DNA of 64,000 nucleotides from IMGVR_UViG_3300017917_002434:62001-126000; one strand, 5' to 3'; positions 16,923-61,716 are shown, counted from the first letter of the stretch. The notes: a model not told the origin generated them from the letters alone. Numbers and translations are program-made.

Positions 16923-19262
16923 ATGCTAGAACCAAGTAGAAAACTCCAAGCAGTCTTTGAAAAAGCGATCGATATCGCACAGAGACTTGAACACGAATAC
17001 GTTACTATCGAACATTTAACTTTTTCTATCATCTTAGATGAAGAAACTTTCAATGGTCTTAGCCAAGCTGGTTTTGCTAGTGAATTCTTAAAAGTTAATT
17101 TAGAACACTTCCTCAAGACTAAATTAGATGATATCAGAACAGGTACGTCTAATCATAAACCTAAAAGAACAACATCTGTCGAACGTGTATTGAACAGAGC
17201 GTTTACTCAGGCATTGTTCAGTGGGAGACAAGTTATAGAAGTAGAAGATGTTCTTATCGCTATTATAGGTGAAAGAAAAAGCTTCAGTTTCTTTTACATG
17301 ACAAAAGCAGGAATTACCAAAGAAAAATTAATCGAGTATTTCCAAACTAAATTTGAAAACAGCGTCGAAGCAGACGAAAGCCCAAGACTTAATCATAATC
17401 AATTGGATAAAATTCTAAATCAGTTTTGTACTAACTTGAGCCTACTGGCCAAACAAAGAAAGATCGATCCTGTTATTGGCAGGGACGATGAATTGGAAAA
17501 AATACAACTTATTCTCGCTCGCAGATCTAAGAGTAATGTTCTGTTAGTTGGAGAACCCGGTGTAGGTAAGACTGCTATCGCGGAAGGCCTAGCACGTAAG
17601 ATATTTGAAAAGAAAGTTCCTAAATTCATATTAGATCACAGTGTTTACACACTAGATATTTCTGCTCTACTAGCAGGTAGCAAATATCGTGGTGATTTTG
17701 AAGAACGTATCAAAGCAGTCCTGACTGCCTTAGAAAAGAAAGGCAAAATCATCCTGTTCATCGATGAGGCTCATATGATGAACGGTGCTGGTGCTGCTAA
17801 CGGTTCAGCAAATGACCTAGCTAATATTCTAAAGCCTATGCTGACCAAAGGTACTATGAAAGTTATCGCTTCTACCACCTGGGAAGAATATCGCAAGCAC
17901 TTCGAAAAAGATCGTGCCCTAATGCGTCGATTCCAACGTGTTACAGTTGACGAACCTACGCCAGAGCTTACTGTTAAAATTGTTAAAGGTATAAGAAAGT
18001 ATTACGAACAGTTCCATACAGTAAAAATTACCGATGCGGCTATTGAACAGGCAGTTAAGATGAGCATCAAATATATGCCGGATAAGAAATTACCGGACAA
18101 GGCTATTGATATCATCGACTGTGCTGCGGCTCGTTATAAAATAAAAGATAATGACGCAGAAACCGCGGTTAGTATCGTTGACATTGAACAGATCATGTTC
18201 GAAGTTAGTAAAATGACTAACATGCCGTTCGAAACTGTCAGCGAAAAAGAATCTAAAAATCTTTCTGACCTAGAAAGCAATCTTAAAAATTCTGTGTTCG
18301 GACAAGAATCAGCGATTTCTAATCTGTTAGATAAGATTTTTGTAGCACAAGCAGGTATGAAAGTACCTAACAAGCCTATCGGATGCTTCTTATTCGTAGG
18401 ACCGACTGGCTGCGGTAAGACAGAAACAGCTAAACAGCTCAGCGATAAAATGGCTATGCCATTAGTTCGATTTGATATGAGTGAATATCAAGAGAAACAT
18501 AGCGTGGCACGGTTGATTGGTGCTCCTCCCGGCTACGTCGGCTTTGAAGATAATGCTGGTCAGCTGATTACTAAATTACAAGAAACTCCAAATTGCGTAC
18601 TGTTGTTGGACGAGATCGAAAAAGCACATCCAGACGTTAGTAACATCTTGCTACAGTTTATGGATAATGGATTCGTAACCGGTTCAAATGGTAAACAGGC
18701 AGACGGTCGTAACACTATTCTTATTATGACATCAAACTTAGGTGCCGCTGACAACGAAAGAAATAGTATTGGATTCGGAGATCTAGAAAAAGATGGGGAA
18801 GATGACAAGGCAGTTAAAAAATTCTTTGCTCCGGAATTTCGAAATCGTCTAGATGCTGTCGTAAAATTTGGCAGTTTATCTATGGATACTGTTAAAGTTA
18901 TCGTTGACAAGTTTATGCGTGACCTTAATCAACAAATCAAAGAGAAGAGAGTCGAAATAATCTTAACTGACGACTCGAGAGATTGGCTGGCAAAGCATGG
19001 CTATAATTCAAAATTAGGTGCTAGGCCGTTAAGTAGACTTATCGATAACGAAATTAAGTCTCCGATTAGTAGAAAAATACTGTTTGGAGAACTTAAGAAT
19101 GGAGGAAAAGTCTTCGTCAATGTGGTTGACAATAAGCTAGACTTTGTTGTAAAATTACAGGAAGAAGAGCTGGATAAATTTGAAAAACGTGCTTTCAAAC
19201 ACCACAGAAGGATTCAAGAGGGTGCTCCATTAATAAAAGATGATACAGTACAAGCCAACTAA
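16923..19262 (+). CDS. clpA: ClpA-like AAA+ unfoldase
   Basis: Clp N-domain, two AAA modules ([16 protein letters not shown]), no M-domain, IGF ClpP-docking loop. Confidence 0.9.
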
Positions 19263-19951: not shown

Positions 19952-20680
19952 ATGCGAGACATTCTTAATAAACTAACAGCGATCAGCGAAACTGCCCTTA
20001 GAGACAAGGAAGATCTAGACGCTAAACGCCAAGCATTGCAGGACTTAGAATCTGATCCTGTAGCTTCCGAAGACCCTGAAATTTCTAGTGCTATAGCACA
20101 ACGCAGAGCAGATCTAGAAAAAGAAGCTAAATCTAAAGGATTCACAGAGTCTTTAGAAATAGGAGACGGGTTTGGCATTAGCTTTTCTGAAGATTTTGAA
20201 ATTGCTACTGAGATTGTAGATATTTTAGAAGACGGAATCGTTATTGATTTAGATGATACAGCATTAGACATGCTAACCAAAGAAGGTTTAGTATTCTTAG
20301 AAGGCGAAATAGTAGAGGGCGAACAGCACGGTAACAGTAAAATTTACGATAAGTGCTGGAAAGGCCATAGAAAAGTCCCAGGTAAAGCAAGAGGCGAAAA
20401 AGGTTCTTGTAAAAAGATCGGTGAGGATAAGGAAGTCGACGAAGCCGAGTATCAAGGTAAAGAAGTTCCGCTAGGTAAGAAGTTACCGGGCGATGTAAAG
20501 AAATCAAAAGTATATGTACGCAAACCAAACGGTAAAGTTGTCAAAGTAAACTTTGGCGATAAGAAGATGCGTATTAAAAAATCAAATCCAGCACGTAGAA
20601 AATCTTTCCGTGCTAGACACAACTGTAAAAATCCAGGACCACGCTGGAAGGCACGTTACTGGTCATGTAGGAGCTGGTAA
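19952..20680 (+). CDS. Putative head-associated protein, acidic N-terminus and basic C-terminal domain
   Basis: C-terminal KVNFGD..RRKSFRARHNC..ARYWSC domain seen in large phages. Confidence 0.55.
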   Translation: MRDILNKLTAISETALRDKEDLDAKRQALQDLESDPVASEDPEISSAIAQRRADLEKEAKSKGFTESLEIGDGFGISFSEDFEIATEIVDILEDGIVIDLDDTALDMLTKEGLVFLEGEIVEGEQHGNSKIYDKCWKGHRKVPGKARGEKGSCKKIGEDKEVDEAEYQGKEVPLGKKLPGDVKKSKVYVRKPNGKVVKVNFGDKKMRIKKSNPARRKSFRARHNCKNPGPRWKARYWSCRSW

Positions 20681-21027
20681 TGAGATTATTTGAATTATTT
20701 GGTCCTGAGCCTGAAAATAAAGACGAAAGAGTAAATTCAGACATAGATTATGTATCTGATTTAAAATTTTTTATCGATAACGATAATGAATTAGTTAGTC
20801 ACAGTTTATTTCCTGCTATCAAGAAGCACAAAAAATTAGGCGGAGAGCCAGGACAATATCATGTCTACCTAGACGCTGTTAGATCCGCTATACCAAAATA
20901 CTGTGCCGAATACGATATGACCGATATCCAAGAAGATGTGTTTACCAATGAAGTCATTGAAGCAGTCTGTAAAAAATTTGCTGAAGAACAGTGTAAGTAT
21001 CTAGAACGCGGCGATTATGAGAATTAA
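20680..21027 (+). CDS. Hypothetical protein (MRLFELF N-terminus)
   Basis: Coupled ORF in the late array. Confidence 0.6.
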   Translation: MRLFELFGPEPENKDERVNSDIDYVSDLKFFIDNDNELVSHSLFPAIKKHKKLGGEPGQYHVYLDAVRSAIPKYCAEYDMTDIQEDVFTNEVIEAVCKKFAEEQCKYLERGDYEN

Positions 21028-21703
21028 TGAATTATTTGAAGACGCTGGTAAAACAGTAGCAGTCGCCTTTGGCAGACTGAATCCACCTACGATTGGTCAT
21101 GAGAAATTAGTCGAGGCCGTATTAAAACAAAAAGCCGACGATCATTTTTTATTTGTTTCTCAGACAACTAAGACTACAGGTAAAAATGATACGAGATTTA
21201 AAAATCCTATACCATTTAATATCAAGATACATTTTGTAGAAAAAGCATTTACTAATATCCCAATAGGAGATACATCTGTTAAAACAGTTATACAGATGAT
21301 GCAATATTTAGAAGACAAAGGATATGAAAATGTAATCTTCGTCTGCGGTAGTGATCGTGTTCCAGAGTTTACACAATTACTTAATGCTCAAAATGGCGTA
21401 GATTATAATATTAAAAATTTAAAGATCGAGTCTAGCGGTGCTAGAGATCCAGACGGCGAAGGAGCAGAAGGAATGAGTGGGACTAAGCTCAGGCAGGCAG
21501 CGATCGATAATGATCTAGAAAAATTTAGATCAGGTTTAGCATCAGGTCTACAGGCAGATGCTGAGGCAGTATTTGCAGCAGTTCGAGAAGGTTTACAACC
21601 GTGGATTACAGAAAGTGTTGTTGAAGGCTACGGTCGTTATTGGTGTTCTACAGATAAAAAATGGAAAACACGCAAAGGTCCTAAACAAAAGAGATCATCA
21701 TGA
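21017..21703 (+). CDS. HxGH-type nucleotidyltransferase (phage cytidyltransferase-like)
   Basis: FGRLNPPTIGH, NP, GSDR, MSGTKLR motifs. Confidence 0.8.
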   Translation: MRINELFEDAGKTVAVAFGRLNPPTIGHEKLVEAVLKQKADDHFLFVSQTTKTTGKNDTRFKNPIPFNIKIHFVEKAFTNIPIGDTSVKTVIQMMQYLEDKGYENVIFVCGSDRVPEFTQLLNAQNGVDYNIKNLKIESSGARDPDGEGAEGMSGTKLRQAAIDNDLEKFRSGLASGLQADAEAVFAAVREGLQPWITESVVEGYGRYWCSTDKKWKTRKGPKQKRSS

Positions 21704-23178
21704 GAGCAAAAGAATTTATCGTAAAGAAAAGAGATCCTAATTGGCAAACACTACAGGCCAAACGCACTAGCGGTGCTGCTGGGGCTCATAAAAATAAAAA
21801 GAAAGCTGCGAAGCAAGGTGATGTCAAACACAAAGCCAAATCTATGGCAGAGGGTTACAACCTAGGTGGTCTTGAGAAAGGCAAGTATTATCTCCACAGC
21901 ATTTACTCTGACAGTGAAATATTTACAGATCCCCGATCTGGCGATCCTATGTCATTTGACAGTTACGACGAAGCGGAAGATTTTCGCAGCGGTATGAGTG
22001 GTCGTGAACATGACGAATACCAAGTATCAGTATTCAATCAAGGGCAGTTGCTGCCTGTAGATGAAAGTGTATCAGAAGGTTCAGATTCTACCATTGCCAC
22101 CTTAGATGATGTTTTTAATGAACATGATTTTTATCGTTTAGAACACATCTGGCCCGCTTTAGAAGCAGGAGATAAAAAAGAAGCCCTAAGACAGATCAAT
22201 CATTATCTTCGCAAAGGTAAGAACCGTGCGTGGTGGGGAGACCTACAAGCCGTTGATATTAAAATAGATTCTAGCGATGTCGAGAACTCAATGGTGATGT
22301 GGAGTAAACCTATCAAGCAAGGCGTAGAGGAAGGTTTACTAACTGAAGATCCAGTAACTGCATTTGCAAGTAAAGCACATGACGAGTGGCGTCAAGGATG
22401 GATCAAACAAAACGGTGGCAAAAATCTTCCTAGAGTTAAGAAAAACAGCGACGGATCCGAGGGCGATATCAACGTTCCATTTAATAAACTTCACCCAGAC
22501 TGGCAACGAGAAAATTTGGCGGCGGGGAAGGCTGCTGAAGCCGCTGTGAAGTCGTATCCGAACGCACTTTCGGATCCCGACGAAATGGAAAAAGCTGCCG
22601 AATTTATTCATGTTGAATGGATGAAACGTAATCCCAAGGCTGATTATAATGCGGCTCAACACGTATCTTATGATCAACTGCCTGAGCCAGAAAAAGAAAA
22701 GGATCGTGTTCACGTTCGAACTATGGCTAAACTTATGGGTAAAACCGGAGGCTCTGTACAAGAATACGGAGATACTGCTAAAGGTCAGAAGATGTTGACT
22801 AAAGTTCATAAGCGAGCAGTTGATCGTATGATTAAAGCAGACGATAAGAGAGATGCTAAAGACGCTAAAAAGAATCAGCAAAGTGCTAATCGTGCTTGGG
22901 ATAGATTTGGCGAGAAAGAAAAGTATGGCGAAGATATAGAAATGGAAAGGGTAAGAGATCCCGAAGACTGGGACGAAGGCAACACCGAACCGCCAAACAA
23001 TATGGCAATCTATATTAACGGCAAGAAATGGAAAGTATTTCCAGGTCGTGGTCGATATGCCGACGACGAAAGAGAGATGAAACAGTTCTACGACTTAAAG
23101 GCATGGTGCCAAAGAAAATCAGAAGCAACAGGCAAGAAATGGGAAGTTTCTAGAACAGGCGAGCCTGCTACAGCATAA
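21700..23178 (+). CDS. Modular protein containing two RyR-like repeats
   Basis: AHDEWR...VPFNKL...REN and IHVEWM...VSYDQLPEPEKEKDR. Confidence 0.6.
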   Translation: MRAKEFIVKKRDPNWQTLQAKRTSGAAGAHKNKKKAAKQGDVKHKAKSMAEGYNLGGLEKGKYYLHSIYSDSEIFTDPRSGDPMSFDSYDEAEDFRSGMSGREHDEYQVSVFNQGQLLPVDESVSEGSDSTIATLDDVFNEHDFYRLEHIWPALEAGDKKEALRQINHYLRKGKNRAWWGDLQAVDIKIDSSDVENSMVMWSKPIKQGVEEGLLTEDPVTAFASKAHDEWRQGWIKQNGGKNLPRVKKNSDGSEGDINVPFNKLHPDWQRENLAAGKAAEAAVKSYPNALSDPDEMEKAAEFIHVEWMKRNPKADYNAAQHVSYDQLPEPEKEKDRVHVRTMAKLMGKTGGSVQEYGDTAKGQKMLTKVHKRAVDRMIKADDKRDAKDAKKNQQSANRAWDRFGEKEKYGEDIEMERVRDPEDWDEGNTEPPNNMAIYINGKKWKVFPGRGRYADDEREMKQFYDLKAWCQRKSEATGKKWEVSRTGEPATA

Positions 23179-23396
23179 TGGAACTATCAGACTTAAAACG
23201 CCTTGCTGGCATTAAGGAATTTAAAGGTTACCAACCCTATGGTGGTAGCAATATCAGCATCACTGGTACTGAAAAAAGACAATTAGAAAAGAAACACAAC
23301 ATTAGGCCCGGGACACCAGAATGGTTTAAGTTATGGTTTAGTTTGCCGTACCTAACAGGAGAAAAACCAGTAGGAGACGATCAATGGTCGAGATAA
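23178..23396 (+). CDS. Hypothetical protein
   Basis: Coupled ORF; LKRLAGI motif; [13 protein letters not shown]. Confidence 0.6.
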
Positions 23397-23710
23397 GCGA
23401 ATCAGCAAAAGCTAAAGTAATTGATTTATTAAATGAGGAAAATAATCCCGATTTAAAATTAAGAACATTTGTACAAGGTGGCGGCTGCTCTGGATTCCAA
23501 TACGGCTTTACTTTTGACGAAGAACAGAATGATGATGATTGGGAAATAAATCTAGACGGTAAGTGGAAGCTATTAGTAGATTCGATGAGCATGACCTATC
23601 TTAACGGAGCCCAGATCGACTACACCGATGATATTAATGGTAGTCAATTTACAATTAAGAATCCCAATGCTCAAACAACATGCGGATGCGGAAGTAGTTT
23701 TACAATATGA
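23384..23710 (+). CDS. erpA: A-type Fe-S carrier (ErpA/IscA family)
   Basis: [30 protein letters not shown]. Confidence 0.9.
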
Positions 23711-23781
23711 ACCAATATCCAGTATATCCAGAACAACAAGGCGAACAAGATCGCCCTTTAAATCCCTACGGACAACACTAA
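23707..23781 (+). CDS. Micro-ORF, 24 aa (not in ORF track)
   Basis: [24 protein letters not shown]; ATGA overlap upstream and TAATG overlap downstream. Confidence 0.5.
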
Positions 23782-25142
23782 TGAGAGCAAAAGAAATTCA
23801 GCCTAAGACATTAGTGGTCTTTGACATAGATGATACTCTGGTTCATACTCAGACCAAAGTTCATGTAGTCAAGGACGGTGAGGTAGTAAAGAGCTTAAAC
23901 AGTCACGACTTTACACATTACAAACTACAACCAGGTGAAAGTTTTGACTTTGAAGATTTTCGCAATGCTAGAGAGTTCTTTGAAAAATCTCGTCCTATCA
24001 TTCCTATGATGAATCAACTCAAGCGTGATATCGCTAGAGGAAACAAAGTTGTTATGGTCACTGCTCGTGCTGATTTCGATGACAAAGAATTGTTCTTAGA
24101 TACTTTCCGTAAGTACGGAGTAGACATTGATAAAGTACATGTCTATCGTGCGGGAAACAGTAAACAGGGAACCACAGAGGAACGTAAAAAAGCTATCATA
24201 AAAACTCTGTTAGATAAAGACAATTATAGCAAAGCTATCATGTATGATGATGCTAAACCTAATCTACATACATTTATAGAATTAAAAAATGACCATCCTA
24301 AGACACGCTTTTATGCTTGGCATGTAAGCCTAGAAGGAGAAGCCTCAGAATATATGAGAGAAGGAATGGTCAGCGAAAAGAGACGCCGACGCAAATTCAG
24401 AGGAGCAGCCTACGGTCCGGGACCATTCGGCGGGTATGGATATGCTACAGGATACAGCGGAGATGGTGGCGGTGCTGTGGGAGAAGCTAGTTACGCAGGT
24501 AACATCGGTGCTATGGAAGTGTTCAAGTTCATGCAGAAAGCAGGACCTGAAGAAAAAGAAATCCTAAAACAATTAATTGCTAGAAAGGATTATAGTCGTG
24601 CGTGGGCATTGATACAGGGGCTAACTGGTGTTAAACTTCAAGGTAAAGAATTTGAGGATCAACATCCTAACGAACAGCCCAGAGGTCCTGAAACTAAACC
24701 AACTATGCCCAAAGGTACAGTCAAAGTAGATGTATCCGATGTCTACGATTGGTACAAATTAGGTCAGCATATTAGTAATATGCGAGGACTGGGCAAACAC
24801 GATTTTGGACAAGGTCCGCCTAGCACTATTTTTTCATTCGGGGACGAAGAATTAGAACACAAATATATTCAGGCATTGCTAAAGACAGGATTAACAACGA
24901 CCGACATCGACCCTGCTGGTCACAAAAAACGCAAAGGACAAAAAGTAGATCCTACTTATAATGTTGAAAATTTTGCTGATGGTAAAGTAAAAGGCAAAAG
25001 CCGACCTGGTCGTGTAAAACGTGCCGGTGCTAGCTGTGACGGATCTGTAACTGACCTAAGAAAACGTGCTAAAAATTCATCAGGCGAAAAAGCCAAGATG
25101 TATCACTGGTGTGCTAATATGAAATCAGGACGCGGTAAATAA
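23781..25142 (+). CDS. Modular protein: HAD phosphatase domain plus short C-terminal modules
   Basis: VFDIDDTL, VTAR, YDD HAD motifs; start moved to MRAKEI (TAATG coupling). Confidence 0.75.
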   Translation: MRAKEIQPKTLVVFDIDDTLVHTQTKVHVVKDGEVVKSLNSHDFTHYKLQPGESFDFEDFRNAREFFEKSRPIIPMMNQLKRDIARGNKVVMVTARADFDDKELFLDTFRKYGVDIDKVHVYRAGNSKQGTTEERKKAIIKTLLDKDNYSKAIMYDDAKPNLHTFIELKNDHPKTRFYAWHVSLEGEASEYMREGMVSEKRRRRKFRGAAYGPGPFGGYGYATGYSGDGGGAVGEASYAGNIGAMEVFKFMQKAGPEEKEILKQLIARKDYSRAWALIQGLTGVKLQGKEFEDQHPNEQPRGPETKPTMPKGTVKVDVSDVYDWYKLGQHISNMRGLGKHDFGQGPPSTIFSFGDEELEHKYIQALLKTGLTTTDIDPAGHKKRKGQKVDPTYNVENFADGKVKGKSRPGRVKRAGASCDGSVTDLRKRAKNSSGEKAKMYHWCANMKSGRGK

Positions 25143-25331: not shown

Positions 25332-25594
25332 AAATCGCAGAAATTATATTAGAGTCAGGTACTGAGGGCGGAACTACAACAGACATGATCGCTAAAGTAG
25401 TAAACCCGCAAGTTGCTATCGGTAACGATCGAGGAAACCGCAGCTACACTGGTAGTCCAGGAAAATCGGGTACTAAAGCACCCCGTGTGCCCAAGGCTGT
25501 ACAAGCTAAAAACCCAGACGGTACTGCTAAAAATGCCCTAGATATCGATACAAACATATTTGGTTCTGGGTCTGCTATCAAAAGATATAAATAA
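25328..25594 (+). CDS. Hypothetical protein (MKIAEIILE)
   Basis: ATGA-coupled. Confidence 0.6.
   Translation: MKIAEIILESGTEGGTTTDMIAKVVNPQVAIGNDRGNRSYTGSPGKSGTKAPRVPKAVQAKNPDGTAKNALDIDTNIFGSGSAIKRYK
25586..25593 (+). promoter_or_regulatory. T4-consensus late promoter TATAAATA
   Basis: Exact T4 late consensus, 5 nt before ATG 25599. Confidence 0.6.
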
Positions 25595-27734: not shown

Positions 27735-30401
27735 TTGAGTTACGTTGACGCATTCTATAATCGCGATCAGGATACTATCCATATTGTCGAACGAGACGAT
27801 AAAGGAATTAGGCATTTTAAAGAATATCCTGCTCGACACATCTTTTACTTTCAAGACCCTAAAGGAAAATACACTAGTACTCACGGAGAACCGCTGAGCC
27901 GTGTAACCTGTAAAAATCTCAAAGATTTACATAAAGAACTTAAAATACATAGTGGCATGAAGCTCTACGAATCGGACATAAATCCGATTTATCGCTGTCT
28001 CGAAGACAATTATCTAAATCAAGATTCTCCTAAATTACAAGTAGCGTTTTTTGATATTGAAGTTGACTTTGATCCGGAACGTGGTTACGCATCGCCTGAA
28101 GATGCTTTTATGCCGATTACTGCTATAGCTATTCATTTACAATGGCTGAATACTCTAGTTTGTTTAGCCCTACCTCCAAAAACGCTAACTTTAGAAGAAG
28201 CCAAAAAACAAGTATCTGAATTTCCTAATACATATATCTTCGAAACAGAGGCTGAACTATTAGATAACTTCTTAAATCTCATCCAAGATGCTGATGTGTT
28301 AAGTGGTTGGAACTCAGAAGGCTTTGATATTCCTTACACAGTTAATCGTGTTACCAAAGTTCTCAGCAAAGATGACACAAGACGTTTCTGTTTGTGGGAT
28401 CAATATCCTAAGAAGCGTGAATACGAGAAATATGGTAGAACTTCTGTGACCTATGATCTCGTAGGTAGAGTACATCTAGATTTATTAGAAATCTATAGAA
28501 AATATACCTACGAAGAAAGACATTCGTATCGACTAGATGCTATCGCCGAATATGAATTAGGAGAAACTAAAACAGTCTATGAAGGTACATTAGATCAACT
28601 TTACAATAATGATTTCAAAAAGTTCATCGAATACAATAGACAAGACTGTGCTCTACTAGATAAACTAGACAATAAACTTAAATTCTTGGATCTCGCTAAT
28701 AAGATCGCACACGAAAATACAGTATTACTACAGACTACAATGGGTGCTGTAGCTGTTACAGAGCAGGCTATCATTAACGAGGCACATCGTAGAGGGATGA
28801 TAGTACCCAATCGGGTAAGAAGAGAACCTGGCTCTGAGCCAGCTGCTGGTGCTTATGTCGCTTATCCTAAGAAAGGCATCCACGAATGGATTGGTTCAGT
28901 TGATATTAACTCACTGTATCCTTCAGCAATTCGTGCCTTAAACATGGGACCAGAGACTATCGTAGGACAGTTGCGTCAAGACTACACTAAAAACTATATC
29001 GATCAAGAAATGGGCAAAGGAAAATCTTTCGCCGCTGCTTGGGAAGGTATATTTGGTAGTCTAGAATACGAATATGTGATGGAAAGAAACGTTGCCAAAG
29101 AAATTACTATCGACTGGGAAGGTGGGGGTAGTGATACACTCAGCGGTGCTCAGATCTATGATCTTATATTCGAAAACAATCAACCTTGGATGCTATCAGC
29201 AAACGGTACTATCTTTACCTACGAAAAAGAAGGTATTATTCCCGGACTGTTAAAGCGTTGGTATGCTGAACGTAAAGAGATGCAGGCCAAACTTAAAGAA
29301 TGTATCGCTGCTGGTAATAAAGTAGAAGAAGAATACTGGGACAAGCGACAGCTAGTTAAGAAGATTAATTTGAACAGTTTGTACGGTGCTATTCTTAATC
29401 CGGGTTGTAGGTTCTTTGATAATAGGATCGGTCAGAGTACTACACTCAGTGGTAGACAGATCGTCAAACATATGGCTAGTAAGATCAATGAAATAGCCAC
29501 AGGAGAATATGATTACAAAGGTAAAGCTGTAATCTACGGTGATACAGACTCATGTTATTTCTCAGCCTATCCTGTATTAAAGAAAGAAATTGAATCTGGA
29601 CAGTTGCCGTGGACCAAAGAAACTGTGGTTCAACTCTATGATCAGATCGCCGACGAAGTAAATGCCAGCTTTCCAAAAATGATGCAGGATAAGTTTCATT
29701 GTCCTAAGACTCGCGGAGAAGTTATTAAAGCAGGTAGAGAACTTGTTGCTTCAAAGGGGCTGTTTATTACCAAGAAGCGTTATGCTGTACTTTATTATGA
29801 TAAAGAAGGCAAACGTACAGATGTTAATGATAAACCTGGTAAAATCAAAGCCATGGGTCTTGATCTGAAACGTTCAGATACTCCTGTTGTAATTCAAGAC
29901 TTCCTTAGCAAAGTACTCGAGATGGTACTTAATGGTGTTCCTAGAGAAGAAGTTCTAGAATACATCACTGATTTCCGTACAGAGTTTAAGACTAGACCTG
30001 GTTGGGAGAAAGGTTCACCTAAACGTGCCAACAACATTACCGAGTATCAGGCTAAAGAAAAGAAACAAGGCAAAGCCAACATGCCCGGCCATGTTCGAGC
30101 TAGCTTAAACTGGAATACTCTGAAACGTATGCATGACGACAAGTACTCTATGGGGATCACTGACGGTGCTAAGGTTATTGTTTGTAAAGTCAAAGATAAT
30201 CCAATGGGCTATACTTCAGTGGCATACCCTGTTGACGAACTTAGATTGCCGCAATGGTTCAAAGATCTTCCGTTCGATGATTCCGAGATGGAGACTACAG
30301 TCATCGACGAAAAGCTAGAAAACCTTATTGGTGTTTTGGAATGGGACATCAGTTCAACAAGGTCAGATAACACATTCAGCAAATTGTTTGATTTTGAGTA
30401 A
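27735..30401 (+). CDS. Family B DNA polymerase (gp43-like) with 3'-5' exonuclease
   Basis: FDIEVD, GWNSEGFD, YNRQD, DINSLYPS, KINLNSLYG, YGDTDS, KKRY; TTG start. Confidence 0.96.
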   Translation: MSYVDAFYNRDQDTIHIVERDDKGIRHFKEYPARHIFYFQDPKGKYTSTHGEPLSRVTCKNLKDLHKELKIHSGMKLYESDINPIYRCLEDNYLNQDSPKLQVAFFDIEVDFDPERGYASPEDAFMPITAIAIHLQWLNTLVCLALPPKTLTLEEAKKQVSEFPNTYIFETEAELLDNFLNLIQDADVLSGWNSEGFDIPYTVNRVTKVLSKDDTRRFCLWDQYPKKREYEKYGRTSVTYDLVGRVHLDLLEIYRKYTYEERHSYRLDAIAEYELGETKTVYEGTLDQLYNNDFKKFIEYNRQDCALLDKLDNKLKFLDLANKIAHENTVLLQTTMGAVAVTEQAIINEAHRRGMIVPNRVRREPGSEPAAGAYVAYPKKGIHEWIGSVDINSLYPSAIRALNMGPETIVGQLRQDYTKNYIDQEMGKGKSFAAAWEGIFGSLEYEYVMERNVAKEITIDWEGGGSDTLSGAQIYDLIFENNQPWMLSANGTIFTYEKEGIIPGLLKRWYAERKEMQAKLKECIAAGNKVEEEYWDKRQLVKKINLNSLYGAILNPGCRFFDNRIGQSTTLSGRQIVKHMASKINEIATGEYDYKGKAVIYGDTDSCYFSAYPVLKKEIESGQLPWTKETVVQLYDQIADEVNASFPKMMQDKFHCPKTRGEVIKAGRELVASKGLFITKKRYAVLYYDKEGKRTDVNDKPGKIKAMGLDLKRSDTPVVIQDFLSKVLEMVLNGVPREEVLEYITDFRTEFKTRPGWEKGSPKRANNITEYQAKEKKQGKANMPGHVRASLNWNTLKRMHDDKYSMGITDGAKVIVCKVKDNPMGYTSVAYPVDELRLPQWFKDLPFDDSEMETTVIDEKLENLIGVLEWDISSTRSDNTFSKLFDFE

Positions 30402-47760: not shown

Positions 47761-48422
47761 ATGTTAATCTCGTTTCCTATTCACAACCCACAGGTCAATT
47801 TAGACAGTTGGGTATCGAAGACGCACAGGAACTCATCGCGTATTGTGCCCGTGTCAGCAATCCCGCAAACCAACTTAACACCGAGACATCAGAAAAACTC
47901 ATCAGATACTTGGTCAAACACAAACACTGGTCACCACTCGAAATGGTCTCAGCCTGTATCGAAATCACTACAACCAGAGATATCGCAAGACAGATCCTTA
48001 GACACAGAAGTTTCAGCTTCCAAGAATTCAGTCAGCGATATGCTGATCCTACTAAAGACCTCTCGTTTGTGGTTAGAGAAGCACGACTTCAAGACCCAAA
48101 GAATCGACAGAACAGTGTCGAAACGGATGACGAACGCCTACAACGAGATTGGGAACTTAGACAAAACAATGTCATCACAGAAGCCAGAATGGCCTACCAA
48201 TGGGCTATCGATAATGGCATAGCCAAAGAACAGGCTCGTGCTGTACTGCCAGAAGGTTTAATTGAAAGTAAACTTTATATGAATGGAACGCTACGTAGTT
48301 GGATTCATTTTATTGAATTACGTAGTGCTAACGGCACACAAAAAGAACACCAAGAAGTTGCGATAGCCTGTGCTAAAGTTATCTCAGAAATATTTCCGTT
48401 AACTAACGATTTTATTGGTTAG
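47757..48422 (+). CDS. thyX: Flavin-dependent thymidylate synthase
   Basis: HWSPLE, RQILRHRSFSFQEFSQRY, EQARAVLP, LRS. Confidence 0.95.
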   Translation: MNVNLVSYSQPTGQFRQLGIEDAQELIAYCARVSNPANQLNTETSEKLIRYLVKHKHWSPLEMVSACIEITTTRDIARQILRHRSFSFQEFSQRYADPTKDLSFVVREARLQDPKNRQNSVETDDERLQRDWELRQNNVITEARMAYQWAIDNGIAKEQARAVLPEGLIESKLYMNGTLRSWIHFIELRSANGTQKEHQEVAIACAKVISEIFPLTNDFIG

Positions 48423-49800
48423 TAATTTTCCACTGATCATATATAGATCGCATTTCGGGGAACGTGCTTAAAAAGTTCGTTCCTCGTCTTTTATCGTGTT
48501 CATCAACAAACGCTACAAAATCTTTTCTGATTGTAGGCAATAAATTTTCGTCGTATCTATGGTCTTCTGCCCATTTGGCTACACGTTGAAATTTTGATAA
48601 TTCCGTGCTATCAAAATGTTTATAACTTAAATTATCAACTTTAGTTTTCATGTAATCAATAGCTTTATATAAACGTTGTATCTGATCGTCGTTGGCTATC
48701 TGTAAACTAAGATGTGGTGGTTCTAAAAGATACGGAGTATCCATCTGTATTCTTCGATTGAATCTTGTATTATATTTTTGTCTTAATTCTAAAATTTTAT
48801 CTAATAATTCTTCGAAATTATAAATGCTTAAAAGATTAACTGTTATCATAAATCCTAATTTACCGTTAGGAACTTCGTTAAGATAACGATGTATATTATT
48901 TTCCCATTGGACTAAATCTAATCCATTTCTAATATATTCTGCTTGATTACCCCAAGTATCAACACTAGTGTAAAGCATAATCTCTTTTACTTTTTTGTTT
49001 TCTTTTAAAGATTTAGCACGAACGATAAATTTATCAAGATTACGCTGCGGTACACTCATATTACTATTAATAGCGAATTGTAAATCTGATCTTGGATGGT
49101 CTTCTATGTAATCTAACATCTTCATGAAATTAGTACTTAATAATGGTTCTCCTCCGGTTACTCTTAGAGTCTCTAAATTTTTATAGCACTCCGGAAACCA
49201 TTGCCAAAAAGCATCAATGTAGGGATTATTCTCTTCTTTATATACAGTACGAGCTTTAGGATTAATTGCGTATTGCCTACGATTAGGCATATATTGTAAA
49301 GGATATTCTCCGTGTTTTTTGATCTCTCCTTCCCAAGCACTGCTAATAGTTGGAGCACAATATATACACTTCATCTGGCATTCTGAACCAAAACTTAATT
49401 CCATATATCTAGGATAAACATCAGCATCCCATGGTAAATTTTTTACATACTCGATACTCGGAATGGTATTTTCAAATTCCCAACTTCTTAAATGTCTGTC
49501 ACTGATTTGGCCTAGATCTTCTAGTGCCCAACAATAACTACATTCTTGAGGACGTTCGCCCTCTAACATCATCTTCCTTTGTTGTTTTTTATAATTACTA
49601 TTGTGTAATGCCGCAGGATTATTGTTCACTTCATCAACACTGACTCTGTGCATAGAAGGATGATAACAACTATGGTTATCTCCGGTATGAAGATGTATTG
49701 TGACCATGTGCCACTTAGCTAGACAAAACCCTTTACCTGTTTTATCTAGTTCATTAGCAATCTTGATATATTTTTTATTCGGGTCTCGACGCCAAAACAT
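48412..49800 (-). CDS. Radical SAM protein with N-terminal auxiliary Cys (twitch-like) domain
   Basis: CQMKCIYC, TGGEPL; N-terminal CLAKW..SCYH..CSYCW. Confidence 0.85.
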   Translation of the reverse strand: MFWRRDPNKKYIKIANELDKTGKGFCLAKWHMVTIHLHTGDNHSCYHPSMHRVSVDEVNNNPAALHNSNYKKQQRKMMLEGERPQECSYCWALEDLGQISDRHLRSWEFENTIPSIEYVKNLPWDADVYPRYMELSFGSECQMKCIYCAPTISSAWEGEIKKHGEYPLQYMPNRRQYAINPKARTVYKEENNPYIDAFWQWFPECYKNLETLRVTGGEPLLSTNFMKMLDYIEDHPRSDLQFAINSNMSVPQRNLDKFIVRAKSLKENKKVKEIMLYTSVDTWGNQAEYIRNGLDLVQWENNIHRYLNEVPNGKLGFMITVNLLSIYNFEELLDKILELRQKYNTRFNRRIQMDTPYLLEPPHLSLQIANDDQIQRLYKAIDYMKTKVDNLSYKHFDSTELSKFQRVAKWAEDHRYDENLLPTIRKDFVAFVDEHDKRRGTNFLSTFPEMRSIYDQWKITNQ

Positions 49801-55136: not shown

Positions 55137-56933
55137 TTATAATACTAGAGCTTCTACTATTTTTATTCCTGTGTCATCTGATGATTCTAATGCGATGGCA
55201 AATACTTCAGTGTACTGATGGAAACTAGCATGAACAGCACAGCCATTATTTGATGCTACTAACCTATCTCCCTTCTTAATAGAACCAACTACTTTAACTG
55301 GCACACGGCCCTTTAAAGCTATATATGTTCCGTTTTCTAAATCTTCGTTCATTCTGAACGCTGGTTTCTCTGAAACCACGCCTATGGCTCTATCTCCAAA
55401 TTGTGCTTCTCTAACTTCTGCTGATCCGCCTATGGCTACAACGGTTCCTACTTCATAATCTTTATCTGCTAGATATTTTTCTGCTAAGTCAGCGTAACGT
55501 GAGCTAGTCGATGTACCATTAAAAAATCTAGCATTAATGTCAGCACCAGCTGTTCTTAAAACAACAGTATCTGGATCTTTATCTACTGATGGCAATCTAC
55601 CTTCAACGGCCTGTGTATTTGTTGAAGTACCGTTAAACAATACAGCACTAATAGTTCCAACAGCAGTTCTAATAGGTATTGATGCCGATCCTGGTAAAGC
55701 TAGATCGCTAGGATTATAGATATTCGCACCTACTTGTAATCTCGTAGCTGATATCGCAGACGACGCTTGACCTACTATAGGACCAGCAAATTCACCTTCA
55801 AATCGTCCGTAGAATGTTCTCGTATCAGCATCAAAAGAAATAACATTTGAATTGTCTCTAACACTACCCTTGTGTACTCCTGTGCTGTTACCAAGAACGT
55901 TGCCTTCAACATCACCAAATAAATGATTGGCAAAAATTTTGTTCCACTTCTTTCCAGCATATCCTAGATTATATTTGGATGTAGAACCTGGGAGTATACA
56001 AAATTCAGAATCGGGATCAGCAACATCAAAAATCTGTCTAGAGAAAATCATCATATCATCTTTATCGACGTTAGATCCTCCAGTACTGATTCTAACAAGA
56101 ATTTGACCATTAATCTGATTTTCTATAATAGGCTGTTGACCTACAGATGAATTAACATAAATTTTTAAATCTTTTCTTGTACTAGTTCCAACAGTTAGAC
56201 CTGCTTGAAAGCCGATAGTGTTATTAAATCCGCCCTCGATATCTGAGCGAATATAATTTGACGGAGACACTCCACCTAGTTTAAGAGCATCACTAGCTGT
56301 TCCCCAGAATACCTGTCCGGTACTCACGCCAGTAGAGTTTACGGAATTTAATGTAATACCTTTCTTGACCTGCCTGCCTGTTTCTGAAAAACCAGCGATA
56401 GTATTTGAAGTTGAAAGTGTAAAATCGTCATCATTGCTGAAAATAGCAGTAGTAACACCACCTACCACAGCACGTAATATAACATGGCTGGTATTGTTAG
56501 AGTCTTTTACTACCTGTGTAACGATCTGTGATGTACCGAATCCTGGGGCACTTTGAGGACCAATCAAAACAAAGTTAGATCCGTTCCAGGCCGATAATTG
56601 ATTAGTGTTAGTGTCAAACCAAAGATCGCCTGCGGTCAATCCAGGTGGCGGAGTTGAAGCAATCTCAGCACCGCTGGCTACCTTGAATTTTGTGCCATCG
56701 TAAAATTTTAATTTTTTGTTAACAGAATCAAACCATATCTGTCCTACAATAGGTTTAGAAGGCGGTATTGTATTTGCGAAATTTTCTAGTAAATGGAGGA
56801 AATTTTCGTTTTGTACTTCGCCGTAGCCCGTATAATTTCTACCTACAAACTTAAGATCTGTAGTATTGTCAATGGTGCCATCGGCAACATTCGTTAAAAA
56901 AGTTCCATTATATCTGTCTACGCGGTATGTCAT
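55137..56933 (-). CDS. Tail fibre protein with C-terminal YADLAE-type chaperone-like domain
   Basis: Shared fibre N-terminus; YADLAEKY...GVVSEKPA..MN...ALKGRVPVKV. Confidence 0.7.
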   Translation of the reverse strand: MTYRVDRYNGTFLTNVADGTIDNTTDLKFVGRNYTGYGEVQNENFLHLLENFANTIPPSKPIVGQIWFDSVNKKLKFYDGTKFKVASGAEIASTPPPGLTAGDLWFDTNTNQLSAWNGSNFVLIGPQSAPGFGTSQIVTQVVKDSNNTSHVILRAVVGGVTTAIFSNDDDFTLSTSNTIAGFSETGRQVKKGITLNSVNSTGVSTGQVFWGTASDALKLGGVSPSNYIRSDIEGGFNNTIGFQAGLTVGTSTRKDLKIYVNSSVGQQPIIENQINGQILVRISTGGSNVDKDDMMIFSRQIFDVADPDSEFCILPGSTSKYNLGYAGKKWNKIFANHLFGDVEGNVLGNSTGVHKGSVRDNSNVISFDADTRTFYGRFEGEFAGPIVGQASSAISATRLQVGANIYNPSDLALPGSASIPIRTAVGTISAVLFNGTSTNTQAVEGRLPSVDKDPDTVVLRTAGADINARFFNGTSTSSRYADLAEKYLADKDYEVGTVVAIGGSAEVREAQFGDRAIGVVSEKPAFRMNEDLENGTYIALKGRVPVKVVGSIKKGDRLVASNNGCAVHASFHQYTEVFAIALESSDDTGIKIVEALVL

Positions 56934-56953
56934 AGTTATTCGTCCAATTCACT

Positions 56954-56965
56954 GTATTTATCGCA
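56954..56965 (-). promoter_or_regulatory. Late promoter TGCGATAAATAC
   Basis: Reverse complement of GTATTTATCGCA, ~20 nt upstream of the fibre gene. Confidence 0.65.
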
Positions 56966-56971
56966 GTTTCT

Positions 56972-57460
56972 TTATTCGAAATTCTGCTTTTTTGCTATGA
57001 TTTCTTTCTCTTCGGCCTCTGAAACAAAGGTAAAAGCACCCGCATTAGACGAATAAGACTGTATCTGATCTTTATGATTTTGCTTGGCAGCATCTAGAAA
57101 CTCTTTCATAGCTGCGAATTCTGGCGTTTTTGCCATATCGCTCTTTTCTAACATATCAATTATTATGTTGATCTGCTTATGTATAGGATACTCAGTAAGT
57201 ATAGTAACGTTAGTATTATACTTTACATAAGATTCTGTGATCACTGGTTTATCTGCCCTAGATCTTACCTCACCTGTGGTGTAGTCTCCGTACCAATAAT
57301 CACCAGCATCTTCGTCAAGCTCTACCGTCTTAGTAACGAAGCTATCAAAATTTAACGCTGAGCGATCTGTATCGGGAGTTATTTCACCTATAAGAACACC
57401 AGTGCTTTTTATAAAAAGTAATTCTCTTGCTATTTTGGCCATTATCCTATCCTTCCCCAA
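56972..57460 (-). CDS. Hypothetical protein (possible fibre accessory)
   Basis: Lies between fibre genes; likely start MAKIAREL. Confidence 0.55.
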   Translation of the reverse strand: MGKDRIMAKIARELLFIKSTGVLIGEITPDTDRSALNFDSFVTKTVELDEDAGDYWYGDYTTGEVRSRADKPVITESYVKYNTNVTILTEYPIHKQINIIIDMLEKSDMAKTPEFAAMKEFLDAAKQNHKDQIQSYSSNAGAFTFVSEAEEKEIIAKKQNFE

Positions 57461-57939
57461 GCTAATACTAAACTGTATTTAGATTTTTCATTGGGTCCTA
57501 TTTCTGTAACTTCATGTTCTAAATGTAAAGGCATGTCTATCAGAGAACCCGGCTCCTCTTCTACTAGATGATCAACACCATGGTCATCATAATACTTAAA
57601 ATGTGGTTTATCACTGCGAAGAAAAATTAATTTAAACTTCCAATAACCGCCTATGCTGTCTTTATGTCTAAGCAGATAATCGCCCGGATCATATCTGTTG
57701 ATAGTCATACTAGTAATAAATCTCGAATCATCTGGAATCGTTCTAGTAATAGCAGACTTAAGATTATCATCCATGTTAAAATGAAATAAACTTTTTAATT
57801 TGCTGCTACCATAGGAAGTCTTAAAATTGTGTGTATCAGTTGAGGTGCGGTTAGAGAACTTATCGCTATGCTTTTCTGCTAGTTCGATAATTTCATCTAC
57901 GTTACTAACATAGTTTTTCACTAGTTTAACCTGAGACAT
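57442..57939 (-). CDS. 2OG-Fe(II) oxygenase
   Basis: INRY.PGD.L.RHKD (HxD), distal HEVTEI, KYSLV. Confidence 0.8.
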   Translation of the reverse strand: MSQVKLVKNYVSNVDEIIELAEKHSDKFSNRTSTDTHNFKTSYGSSKLKSLFHFNMDDNLKSAITRTIPDDSRFITSMTINRYDPGDYLLRHKDSIGGYWKFKLIFLRSDKPHFKYYDDHGVDHLVEEEPGSLIDMPLHLEHEVTEIGPNEKSKYSLVLAWGRIG

Positions 57940-59707: not shown

Positions 59708-59719
59708 TACTTGCTCCTA

Positions 59720-60091
59720 TTATTCTGTTATACTATCTGCGGCAGTCTGTCTTTGCTGCTCTAATTCTAAATATTCTTGCTCACTCAATGATGTTGATAT
59801 TCCTAACGCCTTCTCTCTCATATGTCGCAATACTTTCCAATCAGTGCGATTTAAAAATTCTCTATGTACACTGTTAGTGCTGTATGTAGATTTTGCCAAT
59901 GTCTGTTCGGCAGTTAACGCTTTTACTGTATTAGTAACGGTATCAAAATAATGTGTGTCAGAAACAATCTGATCATATTGCTCGTCAGTTATACCAACGA
60001 CCTGTACACTATTCGGTGTGTTTGGTTGATAATTTAATATCGCCGTTATTTGATTATTTTCTAAGCAGACGTAGTGCATTCTTAACTCCAA
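59720..60091 (-). CDS. Putative tail fibre assembly chaperone
   Basis: R.FL..TDWKVLRH...RQ.A motif; lies between fibre genes; start may be MHYVC. Confidence 0.6.
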   Translation of the reverse strand: MELRMHYVCLENNQITAILNYQPNTPNSVQVVGITDEQYDQIVSDTHYFDTVTNTVKALTAEQTLAKSTYSTNSVHREFLNRTDWKVLRHMREKALGISTSLSEQEYLELEQQRQTAADSITE

Positions 60092-61704: not shown

Positions 61705-61716
61705 GTCGCTCTTCCA

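What the first reader, a model, noticed from the sequence alone, without database searches (positions are those of the whole stretch)
21700..25142. Beads-on-a-string polyproteins with Glu linkers, including RyR-like repeats
Seen: the 492-aa ORF is a chain of short, compositionally distinct modules separated by SMAEG, VDESVSEG, GVEEGLLTED, SVQEY and YGED. One module (~22350-22735) has two RyR-like repeats. The 23781 ORF is similar (YMREGMVSE, AVGEA, EFED, NVENF), and the 21017 ORF ends ITESVVEG plus a basic peptide. Inference: polyproteins cut by the prohead protease into several small effectors, with modules shuffled between phages.
Basis: partly seen in the sequence, partly recalled or inferred. 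Interest (0 to 1): 0.6.

Follow-up and report, generated by a model that had tools for sequence, protein, structure and literature searches.

The report
Shuffled phage polyproteins with Glu linkers
Two genes of an uncultured 270-kb T4-related phage encode chains of small, freely shuffled protein modules joined by a conserved hydrophobic-x-Glu linker that looks like the cutting site of the phage's head protease, so they are probably precursors of proteins packed into the capsid and delivered with the DNA, though no cleavage has been shown.

Summary
The 492-aa ORF (21700-23178) and the 453-aa ORF (23781-25142) are mosaics. Homologues match only single modules, in proteins of 250-860 aa. Residues 217-347 fold as a tandem RyR-repeat domain.

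The linker is a conserved motif, [G/S/D]-[V/M/I]-x-E-[G/A], consensus QGVAEG. It precedes 73 of 94 distinct module contexts, against 8% at random positions.

The genome encodes a T4 gp21-type prohead protease, whose family cuts after L/I-x-E. Its capsid protein keeps the T4 gp23 cleavage site in register. The modular proteins carry N-terminal leaders like the T4 capsid-targeting sequence. A homologue of the neighbouring cytidylyltransferase was found by others in virions of a T4-like cyanophage.

In a large sister lineage the linker is also fixed as DNA (CAAGGTGTGGCGGAAGG, rare codons, always in frame). It therefore also looks like a recombination joint.

Packaging and cleavage are inferred, not shown. 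Verdict: a new variant of T4-type capsid-targeted internal proteins. Confidence 0.55; interest 0.66.

The parts
21700..23178 (+). 492-aa modular ORF (P0001). ATG overlaps the stop of the upstream ORF (ATGA). The first 15 nt (ATGAGAGCAAAAGAA) are identical to the start of ORF 23781.
21700..21852 (+). M1, aa 1-51: leader MRAKEFI... plus a basic peptide (pI 10.7). A homologous segment in P0007 gives a sub-threshold DUF7230 hit. It ends SMAE|G.
   Evidence: 34 homologues (32 aligned from residue 1) match from the N-terminus and 13 HSPs end at aa 52. DUF7230 in P0007 at aa 11-50: 22.4 bits against a cutoff of 27. pI.
21853..22077 (+). M2, aa 52-126: acidic module (pI 4.2) ending VDESVSE|G
22078..22332 (+). 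M3, aa 127-211: module with LDxVFNE. In 18/18 distinct contexts it is preceded by hydrophobic-x-E. Fold unknown.
22321..22350 (+). Double linker GVEE|GLLTE|D (aa 208-217), predicted disordered
   Evidence: pLDDT <50 for aa 205-214; HSP starts pile at aa 204-219
22348..22740 (+). M4, aa 217-347: tandem RyR-repeat-like domain
22765..22947 (+). M5, aa 356-416: basic helical module (pI 9.3) starting right after SVQE|Y
   Evidence: Glu at -1 in 10/10 contexts; low-confidence helices
22948..23175 (+). M6, aa 417-492: compact alpha/beta module (RDPEDWDEGNTEPPNN...) starting after DIEME|R. It is often the last module in homologues.
   Evidence: Glu at -1 in 20/20 contexts; pLDDT 88-95; no PDB fold match
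23781..25142 (+). 453-aa modular ORF starting MRAKEIQPK
23781..24362 (+). HAD-type phosphatase module, aa 1-194 (DIDDT at aa 16-20), ending YMRE|G
   Evidence: phrog_415 at 1.1e-10; Pfam Acid_phosphat_B below threshold; HSP ends at aa 193-196
24378..24485 (+). Basic Gly/Tyr-rich segment, aa 200-235 (pI 10.3), ending AVGE|A
24486..24656 (+). Module C, aa 236-292, ending KEFE|D
   Evidence: 16 HSPs end at aa 292
24657..24968 (+). Module D, aa 293-396, ending YNVE|N. In L003, modules D and E form a separate gene with the leader MRAKEFVIENKKRIQKSKKEFE|D.
24969..25139 (+). Module E, aa 397-453: basic C-terminal module NFADGK...MKSGRGK (pI 10.6). In homologues it is joined directly to HAD or to other modules.
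   Evidence: 34 HSP starts at aa 396; pI
21017..21703 (+). Cytidylyltransferase-like ORF with leader MRINELFE|D, linker SVVE|G (nt 21614-21628) and a 25-aa basic tail (nt 21626-21700)
   Evidence: phrog_3041 at 4e-50; 32% identity to virion-detected S-CREM2 gp154; pI 10.5

Best explanation
These ORFs are precursor polyproteins of a T4-related jumbo phage.

Proposed mechanism:
1. A short N-terminal leader (M-[R/K]-x-x-E-[F/L/I]-hydrophobic, often ending x-E) resembles the T4 capsid-targeting sequence. It takes the chain into the assembling prohead core.
2. There the gp21-family prohead protease cuts after Glu at each exposed [V/M/I/L]-x-E|[G/A/S...] linker. This releases domain-sized products: basic DNA-associated peptides, a RyR-repeat domain, a HAD phosphatase, a nucleotidyltransferase and modules of unknown fold.
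3. The products stay with the packaged DNA and enter the next host.
4. Because each product works alone after cutting, module order is free. Recombination at the linkers reshuffles modules between genes and phages. In a sister lineage the linkers are near-identical 15-18-nt DNA.

Shown: the mosaic architecture, the conserved linker, the protease gene, the conserved capsid-protein site, the leaders, and the DNA-level linker.
Inferred: targeting, cleavage, retention in the capsid and delivery.
For: (1) The linker is conserved at the protein level. QGVAEG occurs 57 times in 120 homologues, always between unrelated modules. Of 94 upstream contexts, 73 carry the motif against 8% at random positions. 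Near-variants of the DNA linker change mostly third-codon positions and the P1' codon. The Glu codon and the middle T of the P3 codon change least. The window's own four linkers use different codons but keep [V/M]-x-E-G.

(2) The protease is present. PF03420 is hit at E 7.5e-24 in the same genome, with 33% identity to T4 gp21. T4 gp21 cuts after L/I-X-E, and the phiKZ and SPN3US proteases also cut after Glu (PMC9026906; PMC5694885).

(3) The phage's capsid protein aligns with T4 gp23 so that KYLSE|SATAG falls on the known gp23 site SFLTE65|AEIGG.

(4) Leaders: 18 of 48 distinct N-termini of such ORFs match a CTS-like pattern, against 0.15 expected. Examples are MRAKEFVIE|N, MRATEFIIE|GVAE|G and MKIDQLFE|S. 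Compare the T4 CTS MKTYQEFIAE, gp24 MAKINELLRE|S and gp22 MLKEQLIAE|A.

(5) The linkers are predicted disordered between confident domains.

(6) Fusion and fission: modules D+E are a separate gene with leader plus KEFE|D in L003.

(7) The virion proteome of the T4-like cyanophage S-CREM2 contains a cytidylyltransferase, ORF154, and its neighbours ORF156 and ORF160 (PMC10665884). ORF154 is homologous to window ORF 21017 (E 6e-24) and starts MKNFSSFLTE|A.

(8) Several modules are strongly basic, like the T4 internal proteins.

(9) Relatives G001 and G003 carry both the linker ORFs and the protease. G002 lacks the protease only because its contig ends inside the head module.
Against: - There is no direct evidence of cleavage or of virion association for these proteins or this phage.
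- The genes sit among replication and chaperone genes (ClpA-like, DNA polymerase B), not in the head cluster. No T4-type late-promoter octamer lies directly upstream of them; the only one in the window is at 25586.
- Fusion partners in homologues include enzymes that would be expected to act in the cytoplasm (dCMP deaminase, HD, pterin dehydratase).
- Some junctions do not fit hydrophobic-x-E at P3 (KEFE|D, YNVE|N, IEME|R).
- The leader of ORF 21700 has no x-E at residues 8-10, and the HAD ORF has no obvious leader cleavage site.
- DNA-level identity of the linker in the sister lineage shows that part of its conservation is by copying, not selection on the peptide.
- The S-CREM2 detection is 3 peptides in a distant relative.
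Confidence: 0.55

Rival explanations
1. The proteins are never cut. They are uncleaved multidomain ('polyvalent'-like) cytoplasmic proteins. The linker is only a flexible hinge that persists because it is the DNA joint at which in-frame recombination shuffles modules.
For: In the sister lineage the linker DNA is near-invariant and uses rare codons. Among 46 non-ascertained GVAE[GA] sites, GCG is used 39 times (background 0.11) and GTG 40 times (background 0.22). The exact 17-mer gives at least 120 IMG/VR stretches, and 102/103 sites are in frame. DNA homology between L019 and L020 stops at the linkers. The genes lie in a hyperplastic non-structural island. Partner domains include cytoplasmic-type enzymes.
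Against: - Where the DNA has diverged (the window, L003), the peptide pattern hydrophobic-x-E-small is still kept and P2 is free. A hinge or a DNA joint does not require this.
- Glu sits at -1 of modules in 30/30 M5 and M6 contexts with varied neighbours.
- Tandem double sites (GVAEG-SLEE|Y) and linkers placed directly after a 9-aa leader (MRATEFIIEGVAEG) make no sense as hinges.
- This reading leaves the CTS-like leaders unexplained.
Confidence: 0.25
2. The chains are cut at the Glu linkers by a different protease, host or phage, in the cytoplasm. This would resemble an RNA-virus polyprotein and involve no capsid targeting.
For: The linker conservation and the order-independence of modules fit any Glu-specific processing. 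The island sits beside the ClpA-like gene, and in relatives also beside DnaJ and peptide deformylase genes.
Against: - No protease domain was found in the ORFs or their immediate neighbours.
- The only Glu-specific enzyme identified in the genome is the gp21-type protease.
- The leaders resemble a capsid-targeting signal.
- A homologue is found in virions.
The rest of the genome was not screened for peptidases.
Confidence: 0.1
3. The apparent mosaicism is an artefact of assembly chimeras, or of low-complexity linkers attracting spurious alignments.
For: All relatives are metagenomic contigs.
Against: The same architectures recur in independent assemblies from JGI, ENA, NCBI and Logan. Modules align at 60-90% identity over 50-140 aa. 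Two modules fold with high confidence. The island is syntenic between the ClpA-like gene and DNA polymerase B in L003 and L004.
Confidence: 0.02

Closest known systems
T4 internal proteins IPI/IPII/IPIII (and Alt), with the capsid-targeting sequence, processed by gp21
   Same: - A short N-terminal leader of the form M-K-x-x-(x)-E-F/L-I/L-x-E.
- Cleavage motif hydrophobic-x-E followed by a small residue.
- A gp21-family protease in the genome.
- Basic products.
- Genes outside the head cluster and hypervariable between relatives (PMC9026906, PMC8442874).
   Different: T4 IPs are single small proteins cut once. Here, chains of up to 6 or more unrelated modules each carry their own internal site. 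Modules include enzymes. In a sister lineage the linker is fixed at the DNA level. Nothing has been tested experimentally.
Inner-body and ejection proteins of giant phages phiKZ, 201phi2-1 and SPN3US
   Same: Many head proteins are cut after Glu at a minimal x-x-E motif. Propeptides carry redundant sites. The products travel with the DNA (PMC5694885, PMC9026906).
   Different: Those proteases prefer S/A/G at P3. Those substrates are paralogous families with long propeptides, not combinatorially shuffled modules. No sequence similarity to them was found.
Polyvalent proteins of phages and conjugative elements (Iyer et al. 2017, PMC5512222)
   Same: Several unrelated domains sit in one polypeptide. 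The proteins are predicted to be packaged and delivered, with proposed proteolytic release of domains.
   Different: Polyvalent proteins are large, carry recognised conflict domains and often their own zincin-like peptidase, and sit next to virion genes. Here the modules are small, no built-in peptidase is detected, a uniform linker motif is used, and the neighbours are replication genes.
Virion-associated cytidylyltransferase of T4-like cyanophage S-CREM2 (and the 'cytidyltransferase' core gene of cyanomyoviruses and pelagimyoviruses)
   Same: It is homologous to window ORF 21017 (32% identity, E 6e-24). It has a CTS-like start, MKNFSSFLTE|A. Its neighbours are Lys-rich modular proteins that are also seen in virions.
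   Different: The cyanophage genes show few canonical GVAEG-type linkers. Cleavage was not examined in that study.

Membership tests
T4-type capsid-targeted, gp21-processed internal proteins | The phage encodes a gp21-family (Peptidase_S77) prohead protease | tested here: met
   PF03420 E 7.5e-24 at G000:168650-169084; 33% identity to T4 gp21
T4-type capsid-targeted, gp21-processed internal proteins | An N-terminal leader of about 10 aa with hydrophobic residues, ending in L/I-x-E | tested here: inconclusive
   ORF 21017 (MRINELFE|D) and many homologues fit: 18/48 against 0.15 expected. ORF 21700 (MRAKEFIVKK) and ORF 23781 (MRAKEIQPK) share the first part, but the first good site of ORF 21700 is at aa 51.
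T4-type capsid-targeted, gp21-processed internal proteins | Cleavage sites conform to hydrophobic-x-E | tested here: met
   SMAE|G, SVSE|G, GVEE|G, LLTE|D, SVQE|Y, SVVE|G, AVGE|A. Three junctions (KEFE|D, YNVE|N, IEME|R) have only Glu at P1.
T4-type capsid-targeted, gp21-processed internal proteins | The protein is present in virions in processed form | not testable with these tools
   Only indirect evidence: S-CREM2 ORF154, a homologue of the neighbouring ORF, was detected in virions.
RyR domain (PF02026) | Pfam model matched above the gathering score | tested here: not met
   No Pfam hit for the 492-aa protein at E <= 0.1. Homologues P0017 and P0105 pass.
RyR domain (PF02026) | Fold of a tandem RyR repeat (Repeat12/34-like) | tested here: met
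   AF2 pLDDT 91. All top Foldseek PDB hits are RyR repeats, with TM 0.55-0.65 and probability 1.0 but E 2.9e-3. The profile finds only RyR chains.
Polyvalent proteins (Iyer et al. 2017) | Multiple recognised conflict or enzymatic domains, often with an embedded peptidase, encoded next to virion or transfer genes | tested here: not met
   No such Pfam, PHROG or peptidase domains were found. The neighbours are the ClpA-like gene, IscA and DNA polymerase B.
HAD-superfamily phosphatase (N-terminal module of ORF 23781) | DxDxT motif and a family profile match | tested here: inconclusive
   DIDDT at aa 16-20. phrog_415 'polynucleotide kinase' 1.1e-10. Pfam Acid_phosphat_B scores 19.3 bits against a cutoff of 27.
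Self-processing viral polyprotein | A protease domain within the polyprotein | tested here: not met
   No protease family was detected in either ORF. M6 has no PDB fold match and M3 has no Atlas lead.

The most novel reading that the evidence does not exclude
A single short in-frame element does two jobs at once. It encodes (Q)G-V-A-E-G, and in one lineage it is fixed as CAA GGT GTG GCG GAA GGY.
- As peptide, it is the cutting site of the prohead protease.
- As DNA, it is the microhomology at which modules are swapped between genes and co-infecting phages.
Together this would give freshwater T4-related jumbo phages an exon-shuffling-like, order-free combinatorial system for building capsid-delivered protein cargo.
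Probability: 0.35. Interest if true: 0.85.

Novelty: new variant of a known kind. Interest (0 to 1): 0.66.

Why it matters
If the linkers are cut in the prohead, these phages carry a large and rapidly recombining repertoire of injected proteins. This would extend the T4 internal-protein and capsid-targeting paradigm from single proteins to polyproteins.

It would also give a simple sequence rule (leader plus hydrophobic-x-E linkers) for finding capsid cargo in uncultured phages. Hundreds of unannotated module families could then be delimited at once, each a candidate for early host takeover or counter-defence.

The DNA-fixed in-frame linker would be a clear natural case of domain shuffling guided by a conserved joint. 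It could also be a practical design rule for loading foreign proteins into T4-like capsids.

Tried and rejected
- Global MAFFT alignment of all module segments to the full protein (A1) misaligned the mosaic and was not used. Modules were aligned separately instead (A2, A3).
- Complex prediction of the protease with aa 100-150 gave 'no answer' (score 0.00). This is no evidence either way.
- ESM Atlas search for M3 and Foldseek PDB search for M5-M6 gave no usable fold match.
- tblastn of the 492-aa protein against 50,697 cultured-phage records found nothing, and blastn found only the cytidylyltransferase.
- The literature holds no phage paper with 'GVAEG'.
- The apparent counter-example G002 (343 kb, 'CheckV 99%', linker ORFs but no gp21 or gp23 hit) was resolved. 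Its contig ends fall exactly at the head module.
- The T4 late-promoter octamer TATAAATA gave no timing information for the two ORFs.
- The first breakpoint-versus-motif test by raw BLAST ends gave only about 3-fold enrichment, because HSP ends are fuzzy. It was replaced by the module-context test.
- Considered and dropped: RiPP or cyanobactin-like precursors (modules of 40-190 aa fold as domains), 2A-like ribosome skipping (no NPGP motif), and internal translation starts at the SD-like GGAAGG (no consistent start codon follows the linker).


Full report
**Context.** The window is bases 62001-126000 of a 269,730-bp IMG/VR virus record. It is a T4-related jumbo phage. It has a gp21-family prohead protease (PF03420, E 7.5e-24; 33% identity to T4 gp21). 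Its major capsid protein is 27% identical to T4 gp23. Portal, scaffold and core-like genes lie in the T4 order. Its DNA polymerase B is closest among cultured phages to Sinorhizobium phage Phosso (51%), Agrobacterium phage Atu_ph07 (47%) and Rak2-like phages (43%).

The two ORFs of the finding lie in a tightly packed plus-strand island between a ClpA-like ATPase (16923-19262) and DNA polymerase B (27735-30401). The island also holds a cytidylyltransferase-like gene (21017-21703) and an IscA-type gene (23384-23710). Relatives L003 and L004 have the same island between the ClpA-like gene and the polymerase, with different contents. L019 and L020 have modular ORFs upstream of the polymerase.

**Observation.** The 492-aa protein has no Pfam or PHROG match and no match in 50,697 cultured-phage records. 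It has 654 metagenomic homologues. Almost all match one or two segments at 60-90% identity, inside proteins of 278-857 aa. The best non-self hit covers 75% at 44% identity.

Mapping the BLAST segments onto the query gives six modules: aa 1-51, 52-126, 127-211, 217-347, 356-416 and 417-492. The breaks are at SMAE|G, SVSE|G, GVEE|GLLTE|D, SVQE|Y and DIEME|R.

The 453-aa protein behaves the same way. A HAD-type phosphatase module (aa 1-194) is followed by four modules, with breaks at YMRE|G, AVGE|A, KEFE|D and YNVE|N. In homologues the HAD module is joined instead to GH19, LysM, dCMP deaminase, HD or ParB domains.

Only 'YGED' is off, by 4 residues.

Residues 205-350 were aligned with 45 homologous segments (A2). 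The profile finds only ryanodine-receptor repeat domains among PDB sequences. The AF2 model is confident (pLDDT 91), and its best structural matches are all RyR Repeat12/34 domains. This supports 'two RyR-like repeats', although the Pfam RyR threshold is not met by this copy.

**The linker is a motif, not just a Glu-rich spacer.**
- In the 120 listed homologues QGVAEG occurs 57 times and GVAEG is present in 48 proteins.
- The 237 non-redundant instances of [GSDP][VIM]xE[GAD] sit between modules that differ from protein to protein. Single proteins carry up to six.
- To avoid circularity I located eight module types by their internal signatures and read what lies upstream. Of 94 distinct contexts, 73 have hydrophobic-x-E within six residues, against 8% at random positions. 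For M3 the count is 18/18. For M5 and M6, Glu is the residue immediately before the module in 10/10 and 20/20 contexts. These contexts are not fully independent.
- Tandem sites are common (GVAEG-SLEE|YGDT, GVEE|GLLTE|D).
- Modules occur in any order.
- Modules D+E of the window's 453-aa protein form a separate gene in L003. That gene starts with its own leader and keeps the junction: MRAKEFVIENKKRIQKSKKEFE|DQHPNE.
- AF2 places the linkers in low-confidence segments between confident domains.

**Link to the prohead protease.** T4 gp21 cuts after L/I-X-E. The phiKZ, 201phi2-1 and SPN3US enzymes also cut after Glu, with few other determinants (PMC9026906; PMC5694885). The linker consensus, [V/M/I]-x-E followed by G/A, is of this type.

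The phage's own capsid protein aligns with T4 gp23 so that KYLSE|SATAG coincides with the known gp23 maturation site SFLTE65|AEIGG, and ALLE|G coincides with PLLE|G. Its scaffold (MLDIVKQLFE|N) and the protease C-terminus (YIAE|S) carry similar sites.

The modular proteins also begin with a recurrent leader. In 48 distinct N-termini of linker-bearing ORFs from IMG/VR, 18 match M-x(2-4)-[EDQ]-hydrophobic-hydrophobic-(x)-E, against 0.15 expected from the internal frequency. Examples are MRAQEFITE|G, MRATEFIIE|GVAE|G, MKIDQLFE|S and MNFKELFE|G.

This resembles the T4 capsid-targeting sequence MKTYQEFIAE, which is sufficient to load foreign proteins into T4 heads. In that sequence residues 4 and 7 matter for targeting and residues 8 and 10 for processing. 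It also resembles the processed N-termini of T4 gp24 (MAKINELLRE|S) and gp22 (MLKEQLIAE|A).

In the window's genome the looser pattern is found at 10 ORF starts against 3.5 expected. These include four island genes and the small ORF between the portal and protease genes. Both ORFs of the finding start with the same 15 nucleotides.

**Outside evidence.** The neighbouring cytidylyltransferase-like ORF belongs to a family present in 555 phage records, mostly T4-like cyanophages. In the T4-like cyanophage S-CREM2, mass spectrometry of CsCl-purified virions detected the cytidylyltransferase ORF154 and the nearby ORF156 and ORF160 (PMC10665884).

ORF154 is 32% identical to the window ORF (E 6e-24). 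It starts MKNFSSFLTE|A, and the P-SSM4 homologue starts MKKFSAFLKE|A. Both are 10-residue T4-like leaders. This is weak evidence (3 peptides, a distant relative), but it is experimental support that the family is packaged.

In a sister lineage the linker is conserved as DNA.
- L007, L019 and L020 use GGTGTGGCGGAAGGY at nearly every GVAEG site, although GCG and GTG are rare codons there.
My rough expectation by chance is of the order of ten.
- In the 80 loci fetched, 102 of 103 sites are in frame as QGVAEG, in ORFs of median length 469 aa. No near-copy occurs out of frame.
- Among 46 further GVAE[GA] sites in the same ORFs, GGT is used 45 times, GTG 40 (background 0.22) and GCG 39 (background 0.11).
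- Nucleotide homology between L019 and L020 begins and ends at linkers. L019 carries two extra modules, each flanked by the element.

So the element is being copied, and recombination happens at it. Peptide-level selection is visible as well. Among 139 near-variants, changes concentrate at third-codon positions and the P1' codon. The Glu codon and the central T of the P3 codon change least. The window's own linkers have diverged in DNA (TCTATGGCAGAGGGT, AGTGTATCAGAAGGT, GGCGTAGAGGAAGGT, AGTGTTGTTGAAGGC) while keeping [V/M]-x-E-G. There is no 14-mer match with two or fewer mismatches in this genome.

**Co-occurrence.** Five large records with the element all have a DNA polymerase 65-67% identical to the window's. 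G001 and G003 also have the protease and an 80%-identical capsid protein. G002 lacks both, but comparing gene order shows that its contig ends fall on either side of the head module. The absence is therefore an assembly break, despite a CheckV estimate of 99%. G004 and G005 are incomplete.

**Interpretation.** The best-supported mechanism is a capsid-targeted polyprotein cut by the prohead protease at the linkers, with module shuffling favoured by the linker (confidence 0.55).

The main rival is that the chains are never cut and the linker is a hinge and recombination joint (0.25). That fits the DNA identity. It does not explain the retained hydrophobic-x-E pattern where the DNA has diverged, the tandem sites, or the leaders. 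Cutting by another protease (0.1) cannot be excluded, because the genome was not screened for other peptidases.

Points against the favoured reading are listed in the explanation section: the non-structural location, no late promoter upstream, cytoplasm-type enzyme partners, and a few junctions with only Glu at P1.

**What the modules do is open.**
- M1, the Gly/Tyr segment, module E and the tail of ORF 21017 are very basic (pI 10.3-10.7), like the T4 internal proteins.
- M4 is RyR-repeat-like. Related solved domains bind adenine nucleotides according to their PDB titles, but no function follows from that.
- M3 and M6 have no recognisable fold relatives.

**Novelty.** Capsid-targeting leaders, Glu-specific prohead proteases and hypervariable internal proteins are established for T4 and giant phages. 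Multidomain packaged 'polyvalent' proteins have been described computationally (PMC5512222). I found no description of order-free chains of small modules joined by one uniform protease-type linker. I also found none of that linker being fixed as an in-frame DNA element. I therefore rate it a new variant of a known kind.

A recently described aquatic jumbo-phage lineage with ClpA, DnaJ and a T4-type protease in its core genes (PMC12619734) may include this phage. I did not test that.

Noticed in passing
window 25586-25593; genome-wide in G000: The T4 late-promoter octamer TATAAATA is strongly depleted: 1 in the window against 8.8 expected, and 11 in the genome against about 45. Of the 11 copies, 10 lie 5-67 nt upstream of an ORF start on the same strand, four of them only 5-9 nt upstream. 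This suggests a T4-type late promoter, possibly with leaderless mRNAs.
   Followed up: partly
L003 10345-11709, and many hits (e.g. P0145, P0166, P0188): In relatives the HAD module is followed, after a Glu junction, by a Gly/Ala-rich weakly hydrophobic segment (GWKDxxxGAALGAA...) and a GH19 muramidase/chitinase domain. This looks like a signal-anchor-type lysin embedded in a polyprotein. The same hydrophobic segment follows SVEE|G in other chains.
   Followed up: no
window 19952-20680, and L003 5402-6163: A 242-aa ORF has an acidic N-terminal half, a small CWxG[YH]xK...C module and a very basic Cys-containing C-terminal module (RRKSFRARHNCKNPGPRWKARYWSCRSW; phrog_7595). Related modules occur in P-SSM4 and in the virion-detected S-CREM2 gp160.
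   Followed up: partly
window 16923-19262; L003 758-4426: A ClpA/ClpB-like double-AAA ATPase lies next to the island. In relatives it is preceded by DnaJ and peptide deformylase genes.
   Followed up: no
G002 (IMGVR_UViG_3300032268_000986, 342,865 bp): The record is rated 99% complete by CheckV, but it lacks the whole head module (portal to capsid protein). Its two ends map to either side of that module in G000.
   Followed up: yes
window 55137-63783 (- strand): Four large ORFs (598, 593, 540 and 688 aa) share an N-terminal region (phrog_15511/14394) and have different tail-fibre-like C-termini. They look like a paralogous fibre set.
   Followed up: no
window 23384-23710: An IscA/HesB-type Fe-S assembly protein (PF01521, E 6e-18) sits inside the modular island and is conserved at the same place in L003. 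A radical-SAM gene lies at 48412-49800 (-).
   Followed up: no
G000:166758-167006 (outside the window): An 82-aa ORF between the portal and protease genes, at the position of T4 gp67, starts MKLLEFFYFND. It carries the same leader type as the island genes.
   Followed up: partly
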